Positions 12,843-57,200 of a stretch of 64,000 bases of DNA are shown here, in pieces (the first letter of the stretch is position 1; each line of letters opens with the position of its first letter). Both the position numbers and the translations under genes were made by a program. The stretch is from positions 62,001 to 126,000 of the forward strand of contig NIVC01002776.1 in NCBI GenBank assembly GCA_002269645.1, written 5' to 3'. This stretch comes from Macrostomum lignano (lineage: Eukaryota). The notes beneath the pieces are model-generated. The model saw only the letters and a program-made list of their open reading frames with translations. It made no database searches and had not been told where the DNA came from.

Positions 12843-14082
12843 GACAAAGGATGACAAAGGATCATCCTTGACAAAGGATGACAAAGGATGATCCTTGACA
12901 AAGGATGACAAAGGATCATCCTTGACAAAGGATGACAAAGGATCATCCTTGACAAAGGATGACAAAGGATCATCCTTGACAAAGATGACAAAGGATCATC
13001 CTTGACAAAGGATGACAAAGGATCATCCTTGACAAAGGATGACAAAGGATCATCCTTGACAAAGATGACAAAGGATCATCCTTGACAAAGGATGACAAAG
13101 GATCATCCTTGACAAAGGATCATCCTTGACAAAGGATGACAAAGGATCATCCTTGACAAAGGATGACAAAGGATCATCCTTGACAAAGGATGACAAAGGA
13201 TCATCCTTGACAAAGGATGACAAAGGATCATCCTTGACAAAGGATGACAAAGGATCATCCTTGACAAATGATGACAAAGGATCATCCTTGACAAAGATGA
13301 CAAAGGATCATCCTTGACAAAGGATGACAAAGGATCATCCTTGACAAAGATGACAAAGGATCATCCTTGACAAAGGATGACAAAGGATCATCCTTGACAA
13401 AGATGACAAAGGATCATCCTTGACAAAGGATGACAAAGGATCATCCTTGACAAAGGATGACAAAGGATCATCCTTGACAAAGGATGACAAAGGATCATCC
13501 TTGACAAAGGATGACAAAGGATCATCCTTGACAAAGGATGACAAAGGATCATCCTTGACAAAGGATGACAAAGGATCATCCTTGACAAAGATGACAAAGG
13601 ATCATCCTTGACAAAGGATGACAAAGGATCATCCTTGACAAAGATGACAAAGGATCATCCTTGACAAAGGATGACAAAGGATCATCCTTGACAAAGATGA
13701 CAAAGGATCATCCTTGACAAAGATGACAAAGGATCATCCTTGACAAAGGATGACAAAGGATCATCCTTGACAAAGGATGACAAAGGATCATCCTTGACAA
13801 AGATGACAAAGGATCATCCTTGACAAAGGATGACAAAGGATCATCCTTGACAAAGGATGACAAAGGATCATCCTTGACAAAGGATGACAAAGGATCATCC
13901 TTGACAAAGATGACAAAGGATCATCCTTGACAAAGATGACAAAGGATCATCCTTGACAAAGGATGACAAAGGATCATCCTTGACAAAGATGACAAAGGAT
14001 CATCCTTGACAAAGGATGACAAAGGATCATCCTTGACAAAGATGACAAAGGATCATCCTTGACAAATATGACAAAAGGATCA
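12843..14082. repeat. 27-bp satellite (GACAAAGGAT-CATCCTT-GACAAAGGAT) with 26-bp variants, ~46 copies
   Basis: Direct periodicity. Each unit contains the interrupted palindrome AAGGAT-C-ATCCTT. Confidence 0.95.
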
Positions 14083-17867: not shown

Positions 17868-18863
17868 TGCAAAGCACTCGCCAATCTGCAACAATGTTGG
17901 CAATGAATTGGATCTGCGTGCGCCATGTAGCATCATACATTAATCTATTATTTCTAAAGCAAAAAATTATAATACCGAATTGAAAACCAGAATGCCAGCT
18001 GGTATCAGTTGAAAAAAAATCAAAATAAAATCAATAAAAACATCCTTCTGGGGACCTGTGTGGATGACATCCTATCAAGATAGACCCCTGTGTTTTATAT
18101 TTTTACAGTTGCTGCTCCCACACTATAATTTTTTGCTATCCTATACTGTCGCCTTGATGAATCAATTGATAAAAGGGAGATGAAAAATGTAAAAAATAGG
18201 TAAAAGTGAAAATTATTTATTTTTTTTATTATTATTATTTTTTAGGTTTTACTTTTTTGGCATGCCAAGACAGTTAAGCATGTGGATAAGTATGCTGCTT
18301 GAATGGGCTTTTGACTACAAAACAGATTGATTCAATTTTTTAGCCCATGGCTACCAGAAGAAATGACAATACTAGTACAAGCAAACCCCCAAGCTCAAGT
18401 TATAGAAGCTAAACTATGTCATTCTTCCTTAGCTATCAAAAAGCACAAATTATTTGCAAAGTTTGACAATGCTTGTTACCTTATAGCCAAATTGCAATGA
18501 ATTTTTGCTGCATATGAAACATTGCATTATAACTTTTGTAATTCTTGCAATGGATTCTTTAGCTTAAGATTTGACGAGTCAAACAATCATTTTCAAATTA
18601 TTATTAAGGTGCAAAGATTTTTGTTATAAATTTCTTCATTTTAATCAAATGACAAGCAGCTTTATTCTATTCTTTGAAATACTTTTTAGATGACAAATGA
18701 AGAGGCAACCTTTGTATAAGGCTTGAGGCTTGACTTGGTATAATTCTACCCCCTAACCTTTGTTCTAGTTCTAGCCATATTTTTTTAAGGAAATAACATT
18801 TTGTCAGATTTCAAAAAAGTCATAAAACTATAAAATAATTATCTATTCAATGACATATGTTAC

Positions 18864-19161
18864 CATACATGCGCAACAGTCGGCCGAGTCGGCCGATCCG
18901 GCCGACCGATCTGGCGGCCAACCAAGGAAGTCGCAAAAATGCCCACCTGAAAAAATAACCAAGTAGTAGTACTAAGTAGCTGACGAGGCATTTTGGCTTA
19001 ATAAGACAGTCATAGTTACTCCTGCCGTTTACCCAAAGTTGCGTTAATTTTGCTTTAGGGTTTTTTTACATGTAAGTCGCATTTTTGGCCAAAAACTACG
19101 TCGCATTTTTGTTGAAACTAAGTCGCATGGCCGACCAAATTTCGGAGGTTGCTCATGTATG
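18864..19161. mobile_element. 298-bp non-autonomous DNA transposon (MITE), hAT-like
   Basis: 14-bp TIRs CATACATGCGCAAC / GTTGCTCATGTATG (one mismatch). An exact 8-bp TSD TATGTTAC lies at 18856-18863 and 19162-19169. Subterminal GGCCGA and AAGTCGCA motifs are repeated. Confidence 0.88.
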
Positions 19162-20878
19162 TATGTTACATTAAATTCCAATTTTGCAGTCAGTCTATAG
19201 ATCATTTTATCTATTTTTTTGGGATACTCATCAGATTAAATTTTATAGTTATTTAGAAAGTTTTTTTAAAAGAAAGATTTTTTTTATTTCTATATATTCT
19301 TCAATAATTTTCCTTAGAAAAATATAATTTATATAGTATTAATAAATATAAATTTGGCTGTCAACTTTTATGTTTACTTTTTTATTAATTATTTTGCTAT
19401 GCTATATACATTTAAATGTTTATTGTGAAAGATTAAATTAACAGATTAAGTCATACAGAATTTTTTTAATTAACTATATATAAAAATATTTTATGAAAAT
19501 AGTATGATGAATGCAAGCATTGGTACTAGCAAATATGCATTTTTGTTCTTCATGTTCTAAAGACTTAGAAGTGCAGATTTTGCTATAAGAAGCTGCAATG
19601 AATTTGCTTGAATTTTTAGTTGCAAAACTGAGAAATTTTACTTTTTTAAGCAGCAAAAATTTTTAACAAAATTGTCAAATTTTGTGAAATAAATTTTGTA
19701 TTAGCTTCTATATTATCTTTAATATTGTGAGCAAGTAATAGCTGGCAATGCCTGTTAACTTTAATTTATTAAATCTATTCTAATTATAGTTCCTATAAAA
19801 AAACATTTTTGGAAGGGGAAGGAAGGCAGAATTCTAGCAACCCTTTTGTGTTCAATTGACAAAAAATACTGCATTGCAATTATAATAAACAATCCTTACA
19901 ATGTAATTTAGTGTCTAGGTTTTGGATTTCTTAAGGACAATCATCAAGTATTCTTCATTTATTTATTATTTATCAATGAGAAAATTAGCTGAAAGTAATA
20001 GACATCTGCATGTATTCCATATTATATATAGTAGCAACATTTAAATATAGTATTTAACAAAGATAAATCTATAAACAAGTGAAGCCGGGTAAGTAATAAT
20101 ACATTTTAGATATATCATTTCTATTAATTTATAATTTTACAAATTAAAGCATGCATTAAAAAACTTTTTAATACATAAAATGCAGCTTTTTTTATAACAT
20201 TCAGAAAAGTTGACAAAATAGTTACAAAAAAATGAAATAGATTATAGAAAAGTAAATGGTATAGTTGATAGAAAAATTGATAAAGTTTTTCAGCTTGTAA
20301 ATAGTCCTACATTAAAAAGCATAGTACTACATTCGACAAAAAATCTTGACTTGAAAAAAAGATCATTATAGGCTATTAGTCAATGGTTTAATAGCCCAAA
20401 AACTTTGAGAATTCAATTTAACTTTGGTAATATTGCCACAAGTTTCAACTGCTGTAACCATAGCCATAAGAAAAAAGCAATTTCTATAGCTGAATTTTCC
20501 TGTCATTATAGGGCTATTTTGTATAGAAAATTATAGTACATATAAAAAACCAAGACAGAATAGAGAAAAACAGCAGTAATAGAGATAAAGAAGTATAAAT
20601 TAAATAGATATAGATTATAGAAATAGAAATATAACATACTATTACTAAACTACTCTTGCTTTTATATTTGTATATTTATATATTGATATAGTTATTTATT
20701 AACTATACTTGTACACATACACTTGACTTGACTTAATACTTGGATTAGATTAGCATAAAGTGCAAGTGCAACAAAAACAAGCAAGACAACTAGATAAGCA
20801 AATAAAATAAACTTCAAAAAACTTTCTAAAAACTTCAATTTTTTTTCAAAACTTCAAAGTGTTAATTATCTACATGTA

Positions 20879-21415
20879 CGAGGGGAAGTAAAAAAGTAAA
20901 GATAGTTTTGTTGTAACGCTTAAAATATAAGAGGTATTGAAATGCAACTGGTTTTGTTTGAAAAAACATCTTTTGTTCTTAATTTGACAGAGTTTTGGTT
21001 CTTCTAGAGTGATTGATTTCTACATGATGACGCTCTAATCACAGTATCCCTATCAGCAACAGAAAATTCAAAAATCGAAGCTTGCACTAAGGTGAAGTTT
21101 CTTGTAAAACTTGGTTGGTAGACAGCCAAAATCATTGATGCTTTGAAGGTCTATATGGACACTGCTCCACCAGATCCAACCATTTACTGCTGGATTTAGG
21201 CTTTTAAGGAAGGCCGAGAGTCCATGGAAATGCCCAGTGGTTGGGAAGGCCCACGACATCGCGCACAGAGGAAAATGTGGCAGCTGTACAGCAGGTACTT
21301 GAGCAGGATCGGTGCGTGACCATAGACAATATTGCTGACCAAGTGGCCATCTCTCATGGCAGTGCTTATTTCATTGTGATGGACTGTCTTGGTCTGAGCA
21401 AGCTGAGTGCCCTTG
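20879..21415 (+). mobile_element. 5' remnant of a mariner (irritans/Hsmar2-like) element; pseudogenised transposase N-terminus
   Basis: TA|CGAGGGGAAGTAAAAAAGT left TIR. Translation NSKIEACTKVKFLVKLGW*TAKIIDALKVY...IYCWI*AFKEGRES/GRPTTSRTEENVAAVQQVLEQDRCVTIDNIA...ISHGSAYFIVMDCLGLSKLSA. Stops at 21119 and 21197, frameshift near 21235. No catalytic domain or right TIR found. Confidence 0.88.
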
Positions 21416-23159
21416 GTATACAATCATTAACGTACAATTCTTAACTATACATGCCATAGTCCAGATCATGCTAGGTGCACAACCAAACAAAAATTGAATA
21501 ATTACAAATGCACGCTAGAAAAAATGTAGTGCACAACCATTCTCAAAAATACGTGGTGTTGCGACAATAAATGACTTTTTTACATTGTAACAAAAAATAT
21601 TTTTTTAAATTGCATAATAGACCCTTATTACCAGATAATTTGGTTGCTTTTTATGCTTTTTGGCAATACTATTTATAGCAGGAAATTTATACATGCAAAG
21701 ATTTGTTTAAATGCCCTTTTACAAGCTTGAAAAAACCAGAAAGCTTAAAATTTGCACTTAAAAATGAACTAAATTGATTATTTATGTAACTATTTTGTTT
21801 TACTAATTATTTTTATTTTTAAATGATATACATTTTGTTTTTTTGCAGCACAATTTTTATTCACCATGTCTAATGCTTGTTGCATTGGTTATATGCTTAT
21901 TAATCATACAATTTTTAGTGGCATACAATTTACTAGAACACTTAATTAGTGTAATTTACTAGCGTACATTTACTAGATAGCTAAATACTTTCTGACATAC
22001 ATGTAACACAACACGATCCGCAATATGGACCATAATGATAGTGGAACAAAACTGGTTAATTTTTTAATGAAATGAAATAGAAAGAACATATACTATATAT
22101 ACTACTTATAAGTAGAAAACAAAAGTAAAAAAGACAAAGTAGATTGTAAATTCCAAATTCTAAAGATTCCAAAAGCCATGACCCTAAAATTTTTGTAATG
22201 CCTAGGATTGGAAAAGATATACATGCATATACCAAGCATAGGCCTACATTTAGTTTTAGTTCTAAGTCTTGCTAGAAATATTTGCTAGCAAGAAACCTTT
22301 GATAAGATTTGGGAGTAGGACCAGTAAATAATAAGGAATATCTTAGAATCTTAGATATATACTTAAACTAGGCCCCTAATATTAATACTTACAAGTTAGA
22401 ATTTAGATCTATAGACTATACCCAGATTAATACTTAGATAAATGCTAAGAATTATGCTTGGACATAGAGGTTAATTATAGGCCTAGCAAGTACAATTTTG
22501 GTGATAGCTATGTAAGATTCAACGAGAAAAGTTTAGACCTATTAAAACTTGGTGGATTAATGATAAGATTAGTTCAAAAATAGAAACATTTTGGAAGAGT
22601 AGAAGCTAACCTCTTTAACAACTTTGGACTTGTGGCATAAGATAATTGAGATTTTTGTAAGATAGTACTAAGTAAGACCCATAGTTTGGAAGGCGACATG
22701 TACGCCGGGATTTCCTGGCATACAGCAAAGGTCTCACAACTATAACAAGATTACTTAGTTTGCTTAGTTTTTACATAGTTACAAGATTACTATTCAAGAT
22801 TTTGACTTCGGATTTCGAGTCCTCAGATGACGATTCAGTTTTAAAAAGGTGAAAGCCTGAGTCAATGTAAAACAAAGTAAATTAAATGCACAGCTTATTT
22901 ATTAGTCAGAAACGCATCAAATAATAAATTATTTGCGACTGTTAGTTTTTACGTTTTGTAACTACTACTATCCTTTACAGCTAAAAGGTTGTAGATAGAA
23001 ATTCCGGGTGCAAACTTAAAAAAAATTATCCCGATATAATTGTAATAGTGCTCAATTTGCGTGCGCGTGCACTTCTAGTGTTTTCGGTTGTTTTCTCCGT
23101 ATTTCTTTCTGCGTCACCCCACCCCTGCGTATAGCCTTTCGCAAAATTTCTTTTCGTTT

Positions 23160-23310
23160 CTTATTGGCTGTAAACGCGTGAATAACGAGCCCTAACCAAT
23201 AGAGTGCTTAGTGCCTACCCTGTCGGCGAAATCCGATTGGTTAGGATTTTCTAAGCTGCGTTTTTCACCCTTCCCTCCCCCATCGCGGTTAGTCTATATA
23301 ATCAAGCAAG
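23160..23310 (+). promoter_or_regulatory. Promoter-like cluster (three CCAAT/ATTGG boxes plus TATA-like CTATATAA), ~1.3 kb upstream of the WIP-like ATG
   Basis: ATTGG ~23164, CCAAT ~23197, GATTGG ~23236, TCTATATAA ~23293. It marks the end of the AT-rich island. Assignment to the WIP-like gene is inferred. Confidence 0.35.
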
Positions 23311-24587
23311 CTGGAACGCAAATAAATCAAGTGTCTCCGGCTAAAGAAGTCCACGGAAATTCAAACTCAAGAATACGCGGCTACATAATTCTGATAGTTC
23401 AACAAGAAACTTGTACTTTTAGTTTAGAAAATGCAAGCTAATTTAGTATGCGCTTTTTCTGTTTCCATCGCAACTTAGTCGGTAAATTTTTCCTATTATA
23501 GACTTTCACTTTACCTCACCACAAGTTCTAAATCTTTTAGAGTAGGATGATTTTCTTGTCTGGAATTTCTCTACCCATTGTTTTGTAAATAAATAATTAC
23601 TTATTTATAGGGCAGGATTTATAATAAATTATTTATATGACATAAGTAATTGTTTTACTTCAATTTATTGATCCGAGAAGCATCTATAAATGCTTGTTAA
23701 ATAAGGCCATTTTTCCAGGCGTTTATCGTTGGTTCTTAATTTTTCGCTGTATTTAATTCCTGATCGAGAGTATCTCAAAATACATAAAATCACATGTGAC
23801 ACGACTGAATTATTGCTTCAAGTATCAGGAAAAAACAAGGTGCCGACTTACGAGTATCCATGCACTACGTCAATACGCTCGTTATTTCAGAAAGTTGATG
23901 GAACATGAAACTCAAGTTGAGGATATAATTTTTGTCTTTTGTAAGTCTTAATTTATTTGCTTAACTGCATCTTGCTTTCTGTTATGGAGCTTACATTCAT
24001 TAATAATATCCTTATCATTAATAACACGAAATATGAGTACAAGAAATCAAGGACCAAACATGAATTGTACCAAAACGTATACGTGCTTGCGGCCGTGCGA
24101 TGAATGAAATTATTGGCAGAAAGACCATAACGCCGGTAAGAAGAAAAGCATTATGTTTATACCCGTATTCATAAATGCAATTTAAAACTAAATGCATGTA
24201 TGCATGTTGATCGGGTGCACTGAGATACGCTGCCAGCACATTCTGCGCTATAAAGCAGAACAACAGACTAAACTGCCCAATATGAATTTAACGGAGCGCC
24301 ACTTGTATGTAATTTGCGACCCGTACAATCAAATGCGCATATATTAACCAAATCTAGGCTAAAGATGGTGCATAGCGGGCGCGGCTTTATATAGCCAGAG
24401 CGTCGGATGCAATACAGGTTTCACCTGTATGGCTCATTTGCGGCTGCAGCTCGCCCGTTCAAGCACAGTTTTAATTTGCACAGAAGTTTGTATATTAATA
24501 GTATTTATTAAGCTGGCTTTTCAAGCCCTTTGAACCATAAGCGTCTGATTTGGTAGTCAAGAGAGCTGACTGAACCAGCAGACAGCC

Positions 24588-26363
24588 ATGCCGCCACCGC
24601 CTCCACCGCCGCCGCCGCCGCCGCCGCCTCCGCCGCCATCGGGTGCTCCGCCTCCATCGTCAACAGCAGGTCGAGGAGCCCTCCTAGGCGACATCAGGAA
24701 AGGTGCCCGGTTGCGCAAAGTGCCGGAAAGCGAGAGAAACGACCGGAGCGACGCCCTGCCTGGAGGCGCTGGGAATGGCAAGGGCACAGGAAGGCCTGTC
24801 GCTGCTGGTAAGCCAACTCGCGATGCTTTCGTAGCATAACTGAAGAATGATCAGAGTAGACGAAGGGTTGGTCAGGTAACCAAGGGTTGGTTGGTCAAAT
24901 AACGACTGTACTGAAGGGCCCAAAGCGATTGTCAAGGTACATGTGTAAAACTAAATTAAATCTTCAGCAAACAACCGAAGATCGACGCACGTCTCTGACG
25001 ACGGAAGCAGCGGGGGCGGCGGATCAGGAGGCGGCGGGTTTCAGGCGGAGCTGATGGCGCAGATCAAGCGGGCCAGATCTCCCACAGCCTCCAGCGCTGC
25101 AGCCAGAGCCCCTGAGCAGGGGGCGCAGCGCTCTGCTGCTGCTTCGTCGTCGCTGGCGCCACCGTCCTCAGGATCGAATCTGCGGCACAGCCGCTCCAAC
25201 GAGGGCTTCCGAGCTTCGCCCAGCCGCTTGAGCCCGGAGCCGCCGCCTGCAGAAGGCCGCATCAGAGCTACAAACTATTTGCAGAGTCCGACACCTCCGG
25301 TACCCACGGGTCGAAGGTTTGCGCAAAACCCGCCACCTCCAATACCCTCAGTGGGTCGCAAGCCTTCTCGGGCGGGTCCGGCGACACAGCCGCCACCAGT
25401 GCCATCGGCTGGGCTTAAGCCTCAGTTAGGAGGTCAGGCGACACAGCCGCCACCAGTGCCATCGGCTGGGCTTAAGCCTCAGTTAGGAGGTCAGGCGACA
25501 CAGCCGCCACCAGTGCCATCGACTGGGCTTCAGCCTCAGTTAGGAGGTCAGGCGACACAGCCGCCACCAGTGCCATCGGCTGGGCTTAAGCCTCAGTTAG
25601 GAGGTCAGGCGACAAAGCCGCCACCAGTGCCATCGGCTGGGCTTAAGCCTCAGTTAGGAGGTCAGGCGACACAGCCGCCACCAGTGCCATCGACTGGGCT
25701 TAAGCCTCAGTTAGGAGGTCAGGCGACACAGCCGCCACCAGTGCCATCGGCTGGGCTTAAGCCTCAGTTAGGAGATCAGGCGACACAGCCGGCACCAGTG
25801 CCATCGGCTGGGCTTAAGCCTCAGTTAGGAGGTCAGGCGACACAGCCGGCACCAGTGCCATCGGCTGGGCTTAAGCCTCAGTTAGGAGGTCAGGCGACAC
25901 AGCCGCCACCAGTGCCATCGGCTGGGCTTAAGCCTCAGTTAGGAGGTCAGGCGACACAGCCGCCACCAGTGCCATCGGCTGGGCTTAAGCCTCAGTTAGG
26001 AGGTCAGGCGACACAGCCGCCACCAGTGCCTTCGCCGAGTCTTAAGCCGCGCCCCAAGTTCCAGTCCGGTCAACCGACAGTTGATCGGTCGGAAGCGCCG
26101 ATCCGCGGTTGCCAGCAGCTGCAGTCGCCACCGAAATTGCCGCCGAAGTCGCCCACGGCTGAGCCGCTGCAGACAGACGGTGCTTCAAGAGGCCGACCAC
26201 CGCCGCCGCCACTACCGTCGAAGTCGCCGCAGGGCGATGTTCAGCTGCCGCAGGGGCGGGACGGCAGCGCCAGAAGCTGGGGGAGAAGTACCAGTTCAAG
26301 CCAGCGGTCATGTTCCCTCGGGTGCAGACTTTCACGGACTGCCCGAAGGTCAAGCGGCTGTGA
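24588..26363 (+). CDS. WIP/verprolin-like actin regulator; exons 24588-24807 and 24968-~26363 (C-terminus in the -1 frame; frame-0 ORF ends at 26394)
   Basis: MPPPP...GRGALLGDIRKGARLRKV...NDRS is the WIP-type WH2. Phase-1 intron GTAAGC..TTCAG, then a second WH2-like FQAELMAQIK and a long Pro-rich region. GEKYQFKPAVMFPRVQTFTDCPKVKRL* in the -1 frame resembles the WASP-binding tail. Confidence 0.88.
25381..26047 (+). repeat. 57-bp coding minisatellite (ATQPPPVPSAGLKPQLGGQ) x ~11.7 in the WIP-like gene
   Basis: Units start at 25381, 25438, 25495 and so on to 26008. All are in frame with no stops. Confidence 0.95.
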
Positions 26364-26929
26364 ATTGACCACGGCGAGCGGCAGTCTGCCCTGATACGAG
26401 TTCTACCAGCCCGGAACAGCGGGTGCGAACTTCATGTATTTGCCGAAGAGACTTGAATGATGCTCTCCGTAGGCTCCATAAGATTGACGTTGAACTTGAA
26501 TTGACCTTGATATTGACCTTTCTAAACTCAATGAAGCAAAAGAAACGTTCTTAAAGCTTCCAAGCACTTCTTATTGGTGCCTTGATACACAGGCTCGTGT
26601 GTGTTACGTCGTAACTCATTTGATTTGATATTTTGGCAACTTTTCAGCTCGGCATGCAGTCTGATTGTCCATCAATATTAACTGATTATTTATTGTCTTT
26701 AGCGTTAAAATTTAACTTCAGAAAAATAATTTTTTTTTCTTGTGAAATTGCGAAATGCCCAATATTGCTGTTTCCCCCTAATGGTAATATTTTTGCTGCT
26801 GGCAACTTGACAAGCAAAAATATAATCATACCAATTAACCGTTTCTCATCGTTTTGCTGCAAAGGCTCATGAGGCGGACTTTTTCATCAAGCGGTCAGTT
26901 GTCTAAGACCTGAGGGTTTCAAGATCCCG

Positions 26930-29335: not shown

Positions 29336-31235
<1,900 letters not shown>

Positions 31236-33121: not shown

Positions 33122-36100
33122 ATGCACAGTTTGTTGTGCCTGCTGCTAACCGGCTGCTGTCTGATTGTTGCGGTGAGTTTCAATGCTCAACTTGCTTTCT
33201 GATTGACTTTGCAGACAGACAAGCAACTGCCGGTAGGTCTTTTAGATTCTGCTACTCAATTATAGGAGTTACAGAGTCCCATCAGTTATAATACCTAAGT
33301 CGGTCTCTATGAGGCCACCTTTCCAGCTCTGCTTCCCTTCAATGTCATCAAAAAACGCGAAATTTCATTACCGCTAAAAATTTTGCACTTACTTTCATAA
33401 ATGGCAGTCTTTTTAGCGGTTGTGAAGTTTCGTGTCAATAAGTTTTTTAAACTTATTTGCAGGTGAACTGCCACGGCTACATGACGATCAAGTTTCAGCA
33501 GTACCACAACCATGACAGCCGGTGCTCCGATGGAACTTATTGCGACACGATTCTTTTCTTCAACTCCAGAGAGAGCGCCTGCGATCCGCACTTCCACCTG
33601 ACAGCTGACCGCTATAACGCTGGCGGGTAGGTAGTTAGAACTTTGACCAACCCTCTAAGCCTCCATCCTCTCGAGCATCAAGGGCGAAAGTCCCTTTTCC
33701 ATTGGTTCGAAATACTCGTACGCTTCCCAAAGACTTTGCTGAAATACAGATTTCGAATTCCTTTCAACTTCAGAAACGGGCTGTTCGACCACAGTCAGTC
33801 AGGCTGGTACTGGGACAAGGATGTGATCGACTTCGGATCGGATTTCGCGGGAATAAAGAATCCCGTTGTCATTGCGATGAACTTCGACAACAACGATGTG
33901 AGTCCGCGCACCGAGTAGTTCGCACCTGCGGTCTGAATCTGAGTCTCATTTCGTGCATGGTGAATTTTCAATTGCAGGGCCGACTCTTCATCAGAGTCAT
34001 TGTCCATGACAAGGACAGCACGGCAGACGATTTGATTGACATATTCTCGGCTACCCTGGAGGCCTCCGGCCCAGACGCAAAGGACCTGACGATTGTCAGC
34101 CATGCGATGGGTCACACGTAGGTTGCTCACATGCTCATAGTTTGTGATAACCTGTTCCAACGTTCATCAAATTTTATCCTTTAATCTCTGCTTCATCAGC
34201 TTGCGCATCCGATACTGGTACAGCTGCCATTCCGGCTACTACGGCGCGCTGTGCAACACCTACTGCATGGAGAAGAATAACGCGTGGGATGGTCATTACA
34301 CCTGCGGCTCAGACGGACAGAAAGTCTGCCGTAGCGGTGAGTGACTGACTTTAAGGCACCAATTCCTATCGATATCGATGGTACTTTTGCACAAAAACTG
34401 AATTTTCTCAAAAACGTTACTTCTTTACTTTCAATCTAAAGTTATGAGCCACTGGTTGAAGGTGTCTCTACGCTCGAGTACGTGCAGTGCCATGAATTGC
34501 CACTAGAAAATGAACGACTGAGAAAATTTTGCTACAGAGATCAGTTCCGCTTATGACTTTATAACGCATTGACTCACCTTAGGCTGGATCGGCGCCGACT
34601 GCAAGACGCCGCACCCGTGTAGCACCGGCGTCTGTCAGAACGGCGCCACTTGTGTACCTAACGGTGACTCCTACAGCTGCCGATGTCCCGCTGACTACTC
34701 CGGTACGAACTGTGAGACCTTTCTCAACCCGTGCACCTACCGAAACCCGTGCAAAAACGGCGCCACCTGCGTACTTAACGGTGACTCCTACAGCTGCCGA
34801 TGTCCCGCTGACTACTCCGGTACGAACTGCGAGACCTTTCTCAACCCGTGCACCTACCGAAACCCGTGCAAAAATGGTGCCACCTGCCAGCTGGACGCCG
34901 GCCGACAGCCGCAGTGCCGCTGCTTGCCGCAGTTCACCGGATCTCATTGTGAGCTCGACGTCGATGAGTGCTCGACTGAGTCGCCGTGCAGTAACGACAT
35001 GCCATGCGTCAACATTCACGGCGGTTTCTACTGCAACTGCACCGACGCAAAGCTCCACGGCAGCCTCTGCGAGTTCGACCGCTGCAACACCACCGTCTGC
35101 TTGAACAGCGGCATCTGTCACGTGAACGAGACGGACGGTGTTCCACGGTGCCTCTGTCCGGAAGGATTTTTAGGAGAGAACTGCGAGATCGATAACCCGT
35201 GCTACAGCAGCCCGTGCCAGAACGGGGCGCCCTGCAGAAACAGCGCCGTCGGATTCGCCTGCGACTGCCCGCCAGACTTCATCGGAGACCGATGCGAGAC
35301 AGCGAAGCCGAACTACTGCGCCAGTGGGCCCTGCCGCAACGGAGGAGACTGCGTCAGCGGTACGGACGGCTTCAGCTGCACCTGTCCAACAGGCTTCAAA
35401 GGCGCGCTCTGCGAACGTTTCGCATCCGAAGGCACCCCGAAATCGGTCGGCCAGGTGGGCGAAAATCCCGGCGACGCCTCGACTGGAAACTCCAGCGTTG
35501 TTGGAGTGGCGGCCGGATGCGCAGTAGGCTTCCTGCTGCTGATTGCCCTCGGCGTGTTCCTGGGCGTCTACCTGCTGCGTCGACGACGTAACGCCGGGTA
35601 AGTACTCGTAGATTGGATGGGCAAAAATAATACGCACCATTGTCGGTTACATCCTCGAAAGCTTGAACTCTCTCGCATAAATAGTATGTATCTTTGTTGC
35701 TAGATATGTGGTTCATTAAACACAGCTTACTATCCTTGATCCGTCCTGAACTACTCGCAGGTCCGAAGCAGATCTCGGGAGCAGCATCGGACACACCAAT
35801 GAAATTTATAACAATGCCAGCGAATTTACCGGCACAGTGCGCAGTTACGAGTAAGTAGAGCAGGTCAAATGTTGTTTAACAATCGGCGTTCCCTATGGGC
35901 CGTCTTGTGTCACTTTCCTTGCGCCTATTAATAATATTTAAAACGTGCTCAGTAATTTCTACTAGCAGTAGTGCATTAATACTGATTTTCTGCAAAAATT
36001 TCTCACAGCCCGACTGTCCAATGGGAAGACGAGCCTGCAGTCTACGAAGCAATCAGCGGTCTGCCGGTTGGCGAACCGGCGAACCAGCTGCCGGTCGGTG

Positions 36101-36135
36101 GACTGGAAAATTCGGCCTACGAAGAGGACGCCTGA
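33122..36135 (+). CDS. Delta/DSL Notch-ligand-like type I membrane protein, 615 aa; exons 33122-33172, 33463-33626, 33774-33897, 33978-34117, 34200-34336, 34583-35597, 35761-35850, 36009-36135
   Basis: Signal peptide MHSLLCLLLTGCCLIVA|VNC, an MNNL/C2-like N-terminus, DSL CHSGYYGALCNTYC...GHYTCGSDGQKVCRS|GWIGADC, 7 EGF repeats, TM and an RRRR stop-transfer. All 7 introns are GT-AG with consistent phases. Exon lengths sum to 1848 nt. Confidence 0.93.
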
Positions 36136-37568
36136 GCAACCAGCGGTGTTCAGAAACTTTTGCCTCGTGTGGCCAAGGAAAAGTTATTGAGAAGCGTCAT
36201 TGCTCTGTTTTATTGATTGATCGATTGACCAAGTTATCATTTAAGTTTACACTTTGCTTTAGCAAGCCGACTCCCGAACACTCATTCAACTCATGCACCG
36301 AATTCCCGCATTTTCCTGCCGATAATTTTCACAAAGTTTCGTTGCATCATAAAGTTTTAACAAGTGTTTACAGCTAATAAAACTGTTTTTTACAAGGTTT
36401 TTTGTATATAAAAGTTAACATCGCTTGCCCGAGAGTGCGTAATGCAATATTTAACTATAGCTCTGATAATTTCTGTTAATTTAACGCTCTTTGATCTCGC
36501 TAGATCTCGCTATTCGTAAAGTTAACTTGTCTGAAATTCAATGCGCTCAAAACTATTCCTTTAATAGATCTTTTTTATTTAAAAAAGTTGTTCTAATACA
36601 CTTAAAAATATTCGAAAACTTGCCGCCAAAACTTGAGTACTTTTCAGTCACTTTTCTGAAATAAAAATTCCAGGAAGTTCTTTGTAAAGCATCGCCAATT
36701 CTGTGAAGTGCTTGAGTCTCTGTTCAACGATGTGAGATCAGTTGGTCAGAGGATCATCTGTCATGACGCCCATTGACACAAAAAGCGTTTTTTTTGTTTC
36801 CCCCGGTGGGCCATCCCGCGATGTGAATGCAAATTGAAACTCCAAAGTGTTGTGCCCGGGTGCACTTGCACCGATGAGCAATCTCTGGCTCTCGGTCAAA
36901 GTGTGCCCGGCTCTGCAGTCCCACCCCCGGCCGCGTGCCTGCGCCAACCCCCCCCATTCTGTCTGCGTCAACCCCCCATTCTGTCTGCGTCAACCCCCCC
37001 TCCAGTTGCACCCACCCCACTGCCTGTTAGGCCAGCCGGCTTTGGCTGGCTGCGGCCCCAGTGCGCCCCCTCGCTCACCCTGCGATTGGATGGTGGTCCA
37101 GCCAATCGGTTTGTTTCCTCTCCCCTCCAATCGCGACCCCGACTTGTAACTTTTTCCTTGTTGGATAAGACGATCGTAATTTTGGCTAGCTGGGCCTGGG
37201 GTAGCGATACCTCAGGGCTTAACCAGCTAGCACAAATATAAATATATATGCAGGAGCGGCAGTAGGGGAGGCATCTCTCTTTCCTTGGTTGAATTGTGCA
37301 AGTCACAGCCATAAGTCTAATACTGCAATCTAGATACCTGTCTATTCCATAGACTGAAGAGAGAACATTGAGAGAAGCCACCCCTGCTGCCGCCACCGCT
37401 GTTACCCGAAGAAACAGAGTGAGTCGCGTGTCTTTCTTATTTGAGGGACTGGCGGGAATCAATCTGTGCAATAGGGACGGGCTGATTAAGTCTCGTGACG
37501 CGATCCCCCGCTCAGAGTCCGAAGTCAGTCCGGCCAGTTGACTGACGCCATCTTCGGCTCGTTCACTA

Positions 37569-54270: not shown

Positions 54271-57200
54271 ATGGCTCGCCTGTTGCAGCGCATGGTCTCC
54301 GACGCCACGGCCAGGATGGCCCAGGCGGTGCCCGGCCTGCAGAGGGCCGACTCGCAGCCCGAGACGAACTGCGGCAGCGGCGTCTCCGAGAGCCGGTGCG
54401 ACCTTCTGCTGCGTCAGGTGAAGCGAGAGGTGGCGCTGCTGATGGAGGTCGCCTCCGCTGGCACCGGCGGTGTGTCCAAGGACAGCCCGGTTGTTCACAC
54501 CCTGTGCTGTGAGGTTCTTGGGTTTTTTGTTCACGCCACTGTCTAATCAGTCACTCTATTGTTCACACCACTGTCTAATCGGTCACTCTCTATTGTTCAC
54601 ACCACTGTCTAATCGGTCACTCTTTATTGTTCACACCACTGCCTAATCGGTCACTCTCTATTGTTCACACCACTGTCTAATCGGTCACTCTTTATTGTTC
54701 ACACCACTGCCTAATCGGTCACTCTCTATTGTTCACACCACTGTCTAATCGGTCACTCTCTATTGTTCACACCACTGTCTAATCGGTCACTCTCTATTGT
54801 TCACACCACTGTCTAATCGATCACTCTCTCTTGTTCACACCACTGCCTAATCGGTCACTCTCTATTGTTCACACCACTGCCTAATCGGTCACTCTCTATT
54901 GTTTACACCACTGCCTAATCGGTCACTCTCTATTGTTCACACCACTGTCTAATCGGTCACTCTCTATTGTTCACACCACTGTCTAATCGGTCACTCTCTA
55001 ATTAAATTACCAGCGCGAGTTGAGAGCTGCCTTCTCTATGGTCTCAAGCGATATCCCGGATTCGAATCGATGCTGCTTCTCCAGCGAGTCGCAGCCGACT
55101 GTCCGCAGGCGGCCGGACTGCGACTCGACGGCGGCAGTGGCTGCTGCGCCTGGATTCGCCGAGCCCTGCTGTCGGGCTGCCTGGCCAGCATTGTGGAGCA
55201 CCTGGCGGCCAATTGCCGCCGCCTGTACGAGCCGGAAAGCATTGTAGGCGACGCCTGCTACGGACCGCTGCTGGCATCGCTGCTGGGTTCGTTGAGCTGA
55301 GATTTTGGGTGCACTTTTGATTACGTAACTTTAGGGCGAAGTTTCTTTCATTCTGCGCATAAATCATTAACTTAAACCTTCTCTGCAGAACTTGGCCACC
55401 TCCAACCACTGCCCTCTGAACCTCTGTCCGACTCCTCCTACCAGCAACCTCTCTGCCCCTGTGCCACACCCGCCTCCTCCTACCAGCAACCTCTCTGCCC
55501 CTGTGCCACACCCGCCTCCCCCTATCAACACCCTCTCTGCCCCTGTGCCACACCCGCCTCCCCCTATCAACACCCTCTCTGCCCCTGTGCCACACCCGCC
55601 TCCCCCTATCAACACCCTCTCTGCCCCTGTGCCACACCCGCCTCCCCCTATCAACACCCTCTCTGCCCCTGTGCCACACCCGCCTCCCCCTATCAACACC
55701 CTCTCTGCCCCTGTGCCACAACCGCCTCCCTGTACTCTGCATCTCGCACCTTTATACCTGTGACCACAACCCTCTCAAGGTGGGTCCTCCTCACTCCATG
55801 CTCTACCGGATCAGGTGTCTCACAAAGAAATCAAGCTTAAGTCAACAATTAAGCATCGCACTTCAAGTTAGTGCTTACTTAAAAGTACACACATAGGTTA
55901 ATTAGGTCCGTAGGCAGCTGAGAGAGAGAGGAGAGAGAGACAGAGAGAGAGAGAGAGAGACAGACACAAACACAGACACAGACACAGACACAGACACAGA
56001 CACAGACACAGACACAGACACAGACACAGACACGGACACAGACACAGACACGGACACAGACACAGACACAGACACAGACACAGACACAGACACGGACACA
56101 GACACAGACACGGACACAGACACAGACACAGACACAGACACAGACACAGACACAGACACGGACACAGACACAGACACAGACACAGACACAGACACAGACA
56201 CAGACACAGACAGACACAGACACAGACACAGAACAGATACAGACACAGACACAGACACAGACACAGACACAGACACAGACACAGACAGACACAGACACAG
56301 ACACAGAACAGATACAGACACAGACACAGACACAGACACAGACACAGACACAGACACAGACACAGACACAGACACAGACACAGACACAGACACAGACAGA
56401 CACAGACACAGACACAGACACAGACACAGACACAGACACAGACACAGACACAGACACAGACACAGACACAGACACAGACACGGACACAGACACAGACACG
56501 GACACAGACACAGACACAGACACAGAACAGATACAGACACAGACACAGACACAGACACAGACACAGACACAGACACAGACAGACACAGACACAGACACAG
56601 ACACAGACACAGACACAGATACAGACACAGACACAGACACAGACACAGACACAGACACAGAACAGATACAGACAGACACAGACACAGACACAGACACAGA
56701 CACAGACACAGACACAGACACAGACAGACACAGACACAGACAGACACAGACACAGACAGACACAGACACAGACACAGACACAGACACAGAACAGATACAG
56801 ACACAGACAGACACAGACACAGACACAGACACAGAACAGATACAGACACAGACACAGACACAGACACAGACACAGACACAGACACAGACAGACACAGACA
56901 CAGACACAGACACAGACACAGACACAGACACAGATACAGACACAGACACAGACACAGACACAGACACAGACACAGAACAGATACAGACACAGACAGACAC
57001 AGACACAGACACAGACACAGACACAGACACAGACACAGACACAGACAGTTCTGAATCCATCGTGTTCCAAAGTAGCTCTGCTGTTTGCCAAACGCATTGA
57101 ACTCCAATGCAATTTGAAGCTGCCTTTTGACAACAGCCTGGCAACGGGAGCTCCTTGATAAGCAGGAATTCACCCTCCTGAGTCCGAGTCGCTGGGTTGA

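What the first reader, a model, noticed from the sequence alone, without database searches (positions are those of the whole stretch)
35578..36135. Delta-like ligand with a lysine-free, tyrosine-motif cytoplasmic tail
Seen: the spliced tail RRRRNAGSEADLGSSIGHTNEIYNNASEFTGTVRSYDPTVQWEDEPAVYEAISGLPVGEPANQLPVGGLENSAYEEDA* has no Lys and no evident PDZ-binding end. It has four Tyr in acidic contexts (EIYNN, SYDP, VYEAI, AYEED). Known: canonical DSL ligands need lysine ubiquitination by Mib/Neur to activate Notch in trans, and lysine-less DLL3 acts as a cis-inhibitor. Acidic pY motifs recruit SH2 proteins, and YxxI can drive AP2 endocytosis. Inference: a DSL protein repurposed as a Notch inhibitor, a ubiquitin-independent ligand, or a receptor signalling in reverse through tyrosine phosphorylation.
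Basis: partly seen in the sequence, partly recalled or inferred. Interest (0 to 1): 0.7.

Follow-up and report, generated by a model that had tools for sequence, protein, structure and literature searches.

The report
Flatworm Delta-like protein, lysine-free tail
The window holds an already annotated Delta-like gene of the flatworm Macrostomum lignano whose short cytoplasmic tail really has no lysine and none of the usual docking sites for the ubiquitin ligases that activate Notch ligands; it carries tyrosine sorting-type motifs instead, a feature shared with a little-studied group of invertebrate relatives.

Summary
Eight GT-AG exons (33122-36135, + strand) give a 615-aa type I membrane protein. 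It is 100% identical to the RNA-seq-derived GenBank product PAA55287.1 ('Delta-like protein', Macrostomum lignano). The 78-aa tail reads exactly as reported: 0 Lys, 4 Tyr, net acidic, ending EEDA.

The ectodomain is a Notch-ligand-type C2-DSL-EGF module by Pfam, AlphaFold2 and Foldseek, but it is divergent. The DSL loop is altered and there is no DOS motif. The tail also lacks the Mib1 N-box, the Neuralized NxxN motif and a PDZ-binding end.

Lysine absence alone is weak evidence (P about 0.11 at this protein's own Lys frequency), and the 'acidic context' of the tyrosines is compositional. The class comparison is stronger. Canonical Delta/Jagged tails in the hit list have 5-26 Lys. Non-canonical DSL proteins of flatworm, molluscs and echinoderms have short Lys-poor tails enriched in NPxY/NxxY (post hoc test).

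My best reading is a ubiquitin-independent, tyrosine-motif-sorted DSL protein, a natural analogue of the engineered Delta-LDLR chimera. A DLL3-like cis-inhibitor and a phosphotyrosine receptor remain open. This is a new variant of a known kind, of moderate interest.

The parts
33122..33172 (+). Exon 1: start codon and signal peptide (MHSLLCLLLTGCCLIVA)
   Evidence: gene model with gtgagt donor; identical to annotated PAA55287.1.
33463..34117 (+). Exons 2-4 (33463-33626, 33774-33897, 33978-34117): N-terminal C2/MNNL-like beta-sandwich
   Evidence: AlphaFold2 pLDDT 85-94; Foldseek hits to C2-DSL-EGF structures of DLL1, DLL4, JAG1, Serrate and Delta. The Pfam MNNL model does not hit.
34200..34336 (+). 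Exon 5: DSL domain with divergent loop CMEKNNAWDGHY
   Evidence: Pfam PF01414, E = 1e-10, residues 169-215; alignment to 27 canonical ligands.
34583..35597 (+). Exon 6: EGF repeats, transmembrane helix (35497-35577) and juxtamembrane RRRRNAG (35578-35597)
   Evidence: helix 511-548 in the model. Contains a 117-bp tandem duplication at 34639-34887.
35761..35850 (+). Exon 7: tail part 1 (SEADLGSSIGHTNEIYNNASEFTGTVRSY); Tyr560 codon 35807-35809 (NEIY, YNN); Tyr573 codon 35846-35848
   Evidence: AG acceptor, gtaagt donor, phase 2. Conserved in two further genomic copies.
36009..36135 (+). Exon 8: tail part 2 (DPTVQWEDEPAVYEAISGLPVGEPANQLPVGGLENSAYEEDA, then stop); Tyr586 codon 36043-36045 (YEAI); Tyr611 codon 36118-36120 (NSAY)
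   Evidence: GLENSAY resembles GLSNPAY of the paralogue.
36376..36381 (+). AATAAA polyadenylation-type signal about 240 nt after the stop
   Evidence: Read. The annotated CDS ends at the same stop.

Best explanation
The gene encodes a non-canonical C2-DSL-EGF type I membrane protein of Macrostomum lignano. Its 78-residue cytoplasmic tail is disordered, acidic and free of lysine. It also lacks the docking boxes for Mindbomb1 and Neuralized and lacks a PDZ-binding end.

I think its surface level and internalisation are most likely governed by short tyrosine-based sorting motifs rather than by the Mib/Neur-ubiquitin-epsin route. The motifs are two NxxY (NEIY560, NSAY611; the second matches NPAY of the closest paralogue) and one YxxO (YEAI586). 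PTB-type clathrin adaptors and AP-2 read such motifs. That would make it a natural counterpart of the engineered Delta-LDLR(NPxY) chimera, which is Lys-free and signals partially.

Shown: the gene model, the tail composition, the absence of the motifs, the ligand-type fold, and the class-wide enrichment of NPxY/NxxY.

Inferred: that the motifs are used for endocytosis, and that the protein engages Notch at all.
For: - Gene model and tail. Identity to the transcript-derived annotation.
- Ligand-type ectodomain.
- Tail predicted disordered (pLDDT below 50 for residues 548-615). No Pfam domain. No homologue outside the species among 1.84 billion representatives.
- No NxxN, no (L/I/V)KN box, no PDZ class I end; two NxxY, one YxxO.
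- Survey of DSL-bearing hits: every canonical (Pfam MNNL+) protein with a recognisable TM has a 71-301 aa tail with 3-26 Lys (all but P0114: 106 aa or more, 5 or more Lys), commonly QNxxN and ATEV/EYIV, and none has NPxY.
- Non-canonical DSL proteins: NPxY in 6 of 11 tails (shuffle mean 0.22) and NxxY in 10 of 11 (shuffle mean 2.25). Scallop and Sinanodonta tails have no Lys beyond the juxtamembrane cluster.
- M. lignano paralogue tails pooled: 3 Lys in 337 residues against 52 in 1821 in the ectodomains, Fisher P = 0.037.
- The only tail Lys of the paralogue is Glu in its near-identical copies.
- The paralogue has the same 3' exon architecture, with both tail introns in phase 2.
- Literature: the Lys-free Dl-LDL+ chimera with an NPxY signal is partly active (PMC3241720). 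FxNPxY is read by PTB adaptors ARH, Dab2 and Numb, and YxxO by AP-2 (PMC2173531).
Against: - The query has no strict NPxY. NSAY and NEIY lack the Pro and the upstream aromatic residue of FxNPxY.
- Short motifs arise easily by chance, and the query-only NxxY test is marginal (P = 0.027).
- The motif class was noticed first and tested afterwards on a hand-picked set of 11 tails.
- Tail sequences of the paralogues are not alignable apart from GL-N-AY, and that motif sits at different positions within the last exon.
- The genomic copies are 93-100% identical, too close to show selection on the tail.
- No orthologue from another flatworm could be retrieved, so conservation of the tyrosines across species is untested.
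- The Dl-LDL+ chimera fails in lateral inhibition (PMC3241720), and DLL3 internalises well yet does not signal. Tyrosine-driven uptake would therefore not prove ligand activity.
Confidence: 0.42

Rival explanations
1. DLL3-like modulator. The protein does not activate Notch in trans. It acts cell-autonomously as a cis-inhibitor or intracellular regulator of Notch, and the Lys-free tail keeps it out of the Mib/Neur-epsin activation route.
For: - It shares the list of DLL3 peculiarities given in PMC2064846: no Lys and no PDZ ligand in the ICD, and a divergent DSL domain.
- The DSL loop that is R-P-R-D-D-x-F in 22-26 of 27 canonical ligands reads M-E-K-N-N-A-W-D here, with one extra residue.
- There is no DOS motif, as in DLL3 (PMC2504490).
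- Lysines are needed to tune down cis-inhibition by Drosophila Delta (PMC10655352), so a Lys-free ligand would be expected to cis-inhibit strongly.
Against: - DOS-less ligands such as DLL4 and LAG-2 do activate Notch (PMC2504490).
- The C2-DSL module is modelled with high confidence and the cysteine, YYG, GHY and GW-G scaffold is intact.
- The class-wide NPxY/NxxY enrichment points to active sorting signals, which a purely retained inhibitor would not need. DLL3 does internalise, though.
- This is not orthology. DLL3 is a vertebrate paralogue and was not among the hits.
Confidence: 0.25
2. Receptor or bidirectional signalling protein. The tyrosines are phosphorylated and recruit SH2/PTB signalling proteins, as in MEGF10/Draper/CED-1, tyrosine-phosphorylated DNER or ephrin-B, so that binding of Notch or another partner signals into the DSL-bearing cell.
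For: - Four Tyr in 78 residues, including YNN (the pYxN pattern preferred by the Grb2 SH2 domain; own knowledge), YEAI (similar to the Src-family pYEEI preference; own knowledge) and two NxxY.
- EGF-repeat receptors MEGF10/Draper combine NPxY with ITAM tyrosines and signal through Src-family kinases and Syk (PMC9804383).
- The M. lignano protein P0117 pairs NPVY with proline-rich PPxLPPRP stretches.
Against: - No ITAM spacing (YxxL/I-x6-12-YxxL/I) and no EMI domain.
- The acidic environment of the tyrosines is explained by composition (P = 0.25).
- There are no phosphorylation data.
- Many PTB domains prefer the unphosphorylated NPxY form (PMC2173531).
Confidence: 0.15
3. Nothing specific. The tail is a fast-evolving disordered linker in a Lys-poor, Arg-using protein. 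Absence of Lys and the tyrosine patterns are chance outcomes without function.
For: - P(0 Lys) = 0.11 at the protein's own Lys frequency.
- The tail has no detectable homologue outside the species and is not alignable with the paralogue tails.
- The model gives it low confidence.
Against: - Lys depletion holds across the M. lignano DSL paralogue tails (Fisher P = 0.037).
- Strong NPxY/NxxY enrichment in the wider non-canonical class.
- The tail exons differ less between genomic copies than the flanking introns do (2 differences in 434 bp against 15 in 642 bp; small numbers).
- Conserved two-exon tail architecture in the paralogue.
Confidence: 0.15

Closest known systems
Vertebrate DLL3 (divergent DSL ligand)
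   Same: Lys-free intracellular domain without a PDZ ligand, a divergent DSL domain and no DOS motif (PMC2064846, PMC3241720, PMC2504490). The query shows all four.
   Different: Not an orthologue. In a rough NJ tree of the C2-DSL region the query groups with invertebrate non-canonical DSL proteins. Its tail carries NxxY and YxxO motifs. The localisation and cis-inhibitory behaviour of DLL3 are untested here.
[quoted passage not shown]
   Same: A DSL ectodomain with a Lys-free tail whose only recognisable signal is an N-x-x-Y-type endocytic motif. The chimera shows that such a tail can support partial Notch activation without ubiquitylation.
   Different: The query is natural. Its motifs are NEIY and NSAY, not FDNPVY. 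Strict NPxY is found in its paralogues and in mollusc and echinoderm relatives. Activity is unknown.
Canonical Delta/Jagged/Serrate ligands
   Same: Signal peptide, C2-like N-terminal domain, DSL domain, EGF repeats and a single TM. The best structural matches are DLL1, DLL4, JAG1, JAG2, Serrate and Delta.
   Different: No Pfam MNNL hit, an altered RPRDD-xF loop with a one-residue insertion, and no DOS or Delta/Jagged-specific EGF1-2 signatures. The tail is 78 aa with 0 Lys, against 106-301 aa with 5-26 Lys, and it has no QNxxN/NxxN motif, no IKN box and no ATEV/EYIV end.
C. elegans DSL-only ligands (LAG-2, APX-1 and secreted DSL proteins)
   Same: A DSL domain without a DOS motif. They show that ligands far from the Drosophila prototype can be functional (PMC2504490).
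   Different: No sequence comparison was run here. Nematode ligands have few EGF repeats and some have no membrane anchor.
MEGF10 / Draper / CED-1 engulfment receptors
   Same: A multi-EGF type I membrane protein with a tyrosine-motif tail (NPxY plus further Tyr motifs) that is tyrosine-phosphorylated and linked to Notch biology (PMC9804383).
   Different: The query has C2 and DSL domains instead of an EMI domain. It has no ITAM spacing and no strict NPxY.

Membership tests
DSL (Delta/Serrate/LAG-2) Notch-ligand family | Type I membrane protein with a signal peptide and a single transmembrane helix | tested here: met
   N-terminal hydrophobic leader. Hydrophobic residues 511-537 followed by RRRR. 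Helix 511-548 in the model.
DSL (Delta/Serrate/LAG-2) Notch-ligand family | DSL domain | tested here: met
   Pfam PF01414, E = 1e-10, 42.2 bits (cut-off 24.2), residues 169-215. All six Cys, YYG, GHY and GW-G are conserved.
DSL (Delta/Serrate/LAG-2) Notch-ligand family | N-terminal C2/MNNL domain | tested here: met
   Pfam PF07657 does not hit. AlphaFold2 models residues 21-160 as a beta-sandwich with pLDDT 85-94. Foldseek aligns 250-330 columns to C2-DSL-EGF structures 4xbm, 5mvx, 4cc0, 7alt and 7alk, E = 1e-14 to 1e-29. Met by fold, not by sequence profile.
DSL (Delta/Serrate/LAG-2) Notch-ligand family | Binds and activates (or inhibits) a Notch receptor | not testable with these tools
Canonical Delta/Jagged subgroup | Conserved DSL loop C-R-P-R-D-D-x-F-G-H-Y | tested here: not met
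   The query has C-M-E-K-N-N-A-W-D-G-H-Y with one extra residue. Among 27 canonical sequences the counts are R 22, P 19, R 25, D 23, D 26 and F 25.
Canonical Delta/Jagged subgroup | DOS motif in EGF1-2 (consensus from PMC2504490) | tested here: not met
   The regex of the published consensus matches 29 of 49 Pfam-MNNL-positive hits. It matches none of the M. lignano proteins or other non-canonical DSL proteins. The regex is imperfect. Pfam PF21700 and PF21795 are also absent.
Canonical Delta/Jagged subgroup | Intracellular lysines as ubiquitin acceptors | tested here: not met
   0 Lys in 78 residues, against 5-26 in all but one of the canonical tails surveyed (P0114: 71 aa, 3 Lys).
Canonical Delta/Jagged subgroup | Mib1 N-box ((L/I/V)KN(T/I)N, IKNTW or IKNxIEK type) and Neuralized-binding NxxN | tested here: not met
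   No [LIV]KN and no N..N in the tail. Motif definitions from PMC3241720, PMC11887331 and PMC12678834.
Canonical Delta/Jagged subgroup | C-terminal PDZ ligand (ATEV, EYIV) | tested here: not met
   The C-terminus is EEDA, with no [ST]-x-hydrophobic end. A weak class III-like reading (E-x-A) cannot be excluded.
DLL3-type divergent ligand (functional class, not orthology) | Lys-free ICD, no PDZ ligand, divergent DSL, no DOS | tested here: met
   compared with the descriptions in PMC2064846 and PMC2504490.
DLL3-type divergent ligand (functional class, not orthology) | Fails to trans-activate; acts in cis; largely intracellular | not testable with these tools
   Needs cell assays and localisation data.
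NPxY (PTB-adaptor) endocytic cargo | Strict (F)xNPxY motif in the cytoplasmic tail | tested here: not met
   The query has NEIY and NSAY only. Strict NPxY is present in paralogues P0002/P0125 and P0117 and in Asterias, Bradybaena and Babylonia relatives.
NPxY (PTB-adaptor) endocytic cargo | Binding to a PTB-domain adaptor and motif-dependent uptake | not testable with these tools
   Biochemical and cell-biological test.
YxxO (AP-2 mu2) endocytic cargo | Y-x-x-bulky hydrophobic motif in an accessible cytoplasmic segment | tested here: met
   YEAI at 586-589 in a segment predicted disordered. This is a pattern match only, and such patterns are common by chance.
MEGF10/Draper/CED-1 receptors | EMI domain, NPxY and ITAM (YxxL/I-x6-12-YxxL/I) | tested here: not met
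   No EMI domain in Pfam. No strict NPxY and only one YxxO motif, so no ITAM.

The most novel reading that the evidence does not exclude
A natural, phylogenetically widespread class of DSL ligands (flatworms, molluscs, echinoderms) has replaced the Mindbomb/Neuralized-ubiquitin-epsin activation step by direct recognition of NPxY/NxxY and YxxO motifs by clathrin adaptors. In this class the pulling force on Notch would be generated without ligand ubiquitylation. The M. lignano protein, with no lysine at all, is the extreme case.
Probability: 0.2. Interest if true: 0.7.

Novelty: new variant of a known kind. Interest (0 to 1): 0.42.

Why it matters
The accepted model says that Notch ligands must be ubiquitylated on tail lysines by Mindbomb1 or Neuralized so that epsin-dependent endocytosis can pull on Notch. 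Whether ubiquitin itself is needed has so far been probed with engineered ligands such as DlK2R and Dl-LDL+.

A natural DSL protein with a Lys-free tail, no E3 docking sites and tyrosine sorting motifs would be an evolutionary experiment on the same question. It sits in a transgenesis-capable regenerating flatworm, and similar tails occur in molluscs and echinoderms.

If it signals, ligand endocytosis by other adaptors is sufficient in vivo. If it does not, it extends the DLL3-type 'decoy or cis-inhibitor' solution beyond vertebrates.

On present evidence, however, this is an annotated but uncharacterised gene with a sequence-level peculiarity and no functional data.

Tried and rejected
1. Orthologue search with the N-terminal C2-DSL region alone and with a profile of the four M. 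lignano paralogues. Both returned no hit at all, not even the query itself. This is a limitation of the word index and says nothing about absence. No flatworm orthologue tails could therefore be compared.

2. Tail-only phmmer against 1.84 billion representatives. Apart from the query itself, the hits inspected (P0126-P0132) are mostly bacterial WD40-repeat proteins plus other tandem-repeat proteins. The best is P0126, E = 5.6e-19 over 12 stretches. I rejected this as homology. The score is the sum of a short match (AISGLPVGEP against AASGKPIGEP) over many repeats. A single repeat unit scores 9.6 bits. Pfam finds nothing in the tail even at E = 10, and the tail is modelled as disordered.

3. 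Pairwise BLASTP of the tail against 13 other non-canonical DSL tails. Nothing was significant. Only GLENSAY/GLSNPAY stands out.

4. Selection analysis on the three genomic copies. The copies are 93-100% identical, so they are too close. I report only raw difference counts.

5. Literature and supplement searches for the gene identifiers and for natural NPxY-tailed DSL ligands. Nothing was found.

6. 'Tyr in acidic contexts' as a signal. Rejected as compositional.

7. Presence of Mib1, Neuralized, epsin or PTB adaptors, and of a canonical Delta/Jagged, in M. lignano. Gazave et al. 2009 (PMC2770060) does not cover flatworms.
Full report
**What is there**

The window is Macrostomum lignano DNA (a free-living flatworm). 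On the + strand, eight exons with GT-AG borders join into a 1848-nt reading frame of 615 codons:
- 33122-33172
- 33463-33626
- 33774-33897
- 33978-34117
- 34200-34336
- 34583-35597
- 35761-35850
- 36009-36135

The product is 100% identical over its full length to GenBank PAA55287.1, locus tag BOX15_Mlig020206g1, which UniProt names 'Delta-like protein'. The annotated gene spans exactly the same 3014 bp on contig NIVC01002776.1. The GenBank annotation of that assembly was derived from RNA-seq-based transcript assemblies (PMC5730564). The splice joins that create the tail are therefore backed by transcript data, which I did not inspect myself.

The finding's start coordinate, 35578, is the first Arg codon after the transmembrane segment (35497-35577). 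It has 78 residues, no Lys, five Arg, four Tyr and 14 acidic residues, and it ends EEDA. Retention of either tail intron gives an immediate stop, so simple splice alternatives also lack lysine. An AATAAA lies about 240 nt after the stop.

**Is it more than chance?**

Taken alone, only weakly.
- At the Lys frequency of the protein's own ectodomain (14 of 493), a Lys-free stretch of 78 residues has P = 0.11. At 5.5% P is 0.012, and at 7.5% (the level of canonical ligand tails) it is 0.002.
- All four Tyr have an acidic neighbour within three residues, but shuffles of the tail achieve this in 25% of cases.
- Two of the four Tyr sit in an N-x-x-Y context (NEIY560, NSAY611), with shuffle P = 0.027.

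**What kind of protein is it?**

Pfam finds a DSL domain (E = 1e-10) and EGF repeats, but not the MNNL model of the ligand N-terminus. A sequence search of solved structures hits DLL1, Jagged-1, Jagged-2, DLL4, Serrate and Delta.

An AlphaFold2 model built on 40 DSL proteins gives pLDDT 85-94 for residues 21-215, a transmembrane helix at 511-548 and pLDDT below 50 for residues 548-615. Foldseek places C2-DSL-EGF crystal structures of DLL1, DLL4, Jagged-1, Jagged-2, Serrate and Delta on top, with E = 1e-14 to 1e-29 over 250-330 aligned columns. The ligand architecture is therefore present.

It is nevertheless divergent in four ways:
- The loop that reads C-R-P-R-D-D-x-F-G-H-Y in 22-26 of 27 canonical ligands reads C-M-E-K-N-N-A-W-D-G-H-Y, with one extra residue.
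- The published DOS consensus (PMC2504490) is not matched.
- The Pfam signatures specific to Delta/Jagged EGF1-2 are absent.
- In a rough NJ tree of the C2-DSL region, without bootstrap, the M. lignano proteins fall with other non-canonical DSL proteins outside the canonical Delta/Jagged cluster.

**The tail compared with other tails**

I extracted the tails of the DSL-bearing hits.

Every canonical protein (Pfam MNNL-positive) with a recognisable transmembrane segment has a tail of 71-301 residues with 3-26 lysines; apart from the Sinanodonta protein P0114 (71 residues, 3 lysines, NVTY), which I group with the non-canonical tails below, they are 106-301 residues with 5-26 lysines. They usually also carry a QNxxN or NN box and an ATEV or EYIV end. 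None has NPxY.

The query tail has no NxxN (the Neuralized-binding motif, PMC12678834). It has no (L/I/V)KN box (Mib1 N-box type, PMC3241720 and PMC11887331) and no PDZ class I end.

The non-canonical DSL proteins behave differently:
- These are M. lignano paralogues P0002/P0125 and P0117, Asterias P0004 and P0050, and the snails P0071 and P0116.
- They also include scallop P0023 and P0027, Sinanodonta P0114 and an unnamed Logan contig, P0100.
- Most have short (42-126 residue), acidic, Lys-poor tails; P0116 (212 residues) and P0100 (424 residues, 17 Lys) are longer.
- NPxY occurs in 6 of 11 such tails against 0.22 expected from shuffles.
- NxxY occurs in 10 of 11 against 2.25 expected.
- The scallop and Sinanodonta tails have no lysine beyond the juxtamembrane cluster. 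Juxtamembrane lysines were found dispensable for signalling in Drosophila Delta (PMC11887331).

This test is post hoc and the set was hand-picked.

Within M. lignano, the pooled DSL tails hold 3 Lys in 337 residues, against 52 in 1821 in the ectodomains (Fisher P = 0.037). The single tail lysine of P0002 is Glu in its near-identical copies P0125 and P0124.

The paralogue locus has the same 3' architecture as the query. A large exon ends just after the Arg cluster, followed by two small tail exons, and both introns are in phase 2. The tails themselves are not alignable. The only resemblance is GLENSAY (query) to GLSNPAY (paralogue).

**Conservation**

Two further genomic copies, on NIVC01003632.1 and NIVC01000795.1, encode proteins 96% and 99% identical to the query. 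A fourth protein in the cluster (P0123, UniRef only) is 97% identical. All three tails are identical to the query's except for one Phe-to-Cys change. This fits the known redundancy of this assembly (PMC5730564).

Between the two other genomic copies and the window, the tail exons show 2 differences in 434 bp and the flanking introns 15 in 642 bp. This is consistent with constraint, but it rests on few events.

Outside the species, the tail has no detectable homologue among 1.84 billion representative proteins. The WD40-repeat hits in that search are an artefact of repeat-summed scoring. Two attempts to find flatworm orthologues through the N-terminal region returned nothing at all, not even the query.

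**How it most likely works**

The literature sets the frame:
- DLL3 has a Lys-free, PDZ-less tail. It internalises but does not signal (PMC2064846, PMC3241720).
- Drosophila Delta with all tail lysines changed to Arg still supports complete development. Its lysines are needed for Mib1-dependent signalling and to reduce cis-inhibition (PMC5675594, PMC10655352).
- A Lys-free chimera of Delta with the NPxY endocytosis signal of the LDL receptor restores signalling partly. It induces Wingless at the wing margin but fails in lateral inhibition (PMC3241720, citing Wang and Struhl 2004).
- FxNPxY is read by PTB adaptors (ARH, Dab2, Numb) and YxxO by AP-2 (PMC2173531).

Against this background my best reading has confidence 0.42. 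The tail is decoupled from Mib/Neur-ubiquitin control and is sorted through its tyrosine motifs. These are NSAY611 (homologous in position-independent sense to NPAY of the paralogue), NEIY560 and YEAI586.

Whether the protein then acts as a ubiquitin-independent trans-ligand or mainly as a modulator cannot be decided from sequence.

The rival readings are:
- A DLL3-like cis-acting inhibitor (0.25). This is favoured by the altered DSL loop and the missing DOS motif.
- A phosphotyrosine-signalling receptor of the MEGF10/Draper type (0.15). The protein has no ITAM and no EMI domain.
- A functionless, fast-evolving tail (0.15).

**Novelty**

The gene is annotated but I found no publication mentioning it. 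I also found no description of natural DSL ligands with NPxY-type tails. Lys-free DSL tails are known (DLL3), and ubiquitin-independent ligand activity is known from engineered proteins.

I therefore file this as a new variant of a known kind. Planarian work shows that flatworm Delta genes do act on Notch in trans (delta-2 and notch-1, PMC11801701), so a functional test in M. lignano is realistic.

Noticed in passing
window 34639-34887 (+), inside exon 6: A 117-bp tandem duplication (2.1 copies, 95% match) duplicates one 39-aa EGF repeat almost exactly. The other genomic copies differ in this region: P0121 has a different repeat variant and P0123 lacks 44 residues. This suggests recent change in EGF repeat number, or assembly collapse.
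   Followed up: partly
window 30894-31235 (+): An ORF encodes a RING finger (Pfam zf-C3HC4_3, E = 5.7e-8) about 1.9 kb upstream of the DSL gene start. No upstream exons were recognised, and the GenBank record lists no gene within 10 kb upstream. An E3-ligase-type exon next to a ligand that cannot be ubiquitylated on lysine is probably coincidence.
   Followed up: partly
window 24588-24839 and 25054-26394 (+): A poly-proline stretch followed by a WH2 actin-binding motif (Pfam WH2, E = 4e-10). After it comes a 446-aa proline-rich ORF built from 11.8 copies of a 57-bp repeat (25375-26048). It looks like a WASP/WIP/verprolin-type actin regulator and is not annotated in the GenBank record.
   Followed up: partly
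window 12843-14082, 29584-29930, 41564-43580, 46885-47586, 49790-51538, 55938-57047, 58514-59884 and others: The window is unusually rich in long micro- and minisatellite arrays, for example 48-bp x 42, TGTC x 438 and AGACAC x 190. These explain the extreme GC- and AT-skew blocks in the composition profile and fit the reported 15% simple/tandem repeat content of this genome.
   Followed up: no
window 18001-24000: An AT-rich block (GC 0.29-0.34) lies within a window that is otherwise at 0.45-0.60 GC. Its content was not examined.
   Followed up: no
window 35761-36135 (tail exons) versus bacterial proteins P0126-P0136: The tail scores E = 5.6e-19 against a bacterial WD40-repeat protein, because a short match (AISGLPVGEP against AASGKPIGEP) is summed over 12 repeats. 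A single unit scores 9.6 bits and Pfam finds no WD40 in the tail. I judged this to be chance.
   Followed up: yes
loci L001 (NIVC01003632.1), L002 (NIVC01000795.1), L003 (NIVC01000092.1): The gene exists in three near-identical genomic copies (93-100% DNA identity, introns included), and the closest paralogue in at least three. The paralogue's only tail lysine (NNKTV in P0002) is glutamate (NNETV) in P0125 and P0124. The paralogue shares the two-exon tail architecture, with phase-2 introns.
   Followed up: yes
protein P0117 (M. lignano, 1073 aa; not in the window): This looks like a fused gene model. A DSL-EGF-TM protein with an NPVY tail is joined to a second EGF-TM protein whose tail also has NPVY, VYEVP, SYEEP and a PPQLPPRP stretch. 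It suggests a wider M. lignano family of EGF-repeat membrane proteins with NPxY plus proline-rich tails.
   Followed up: no
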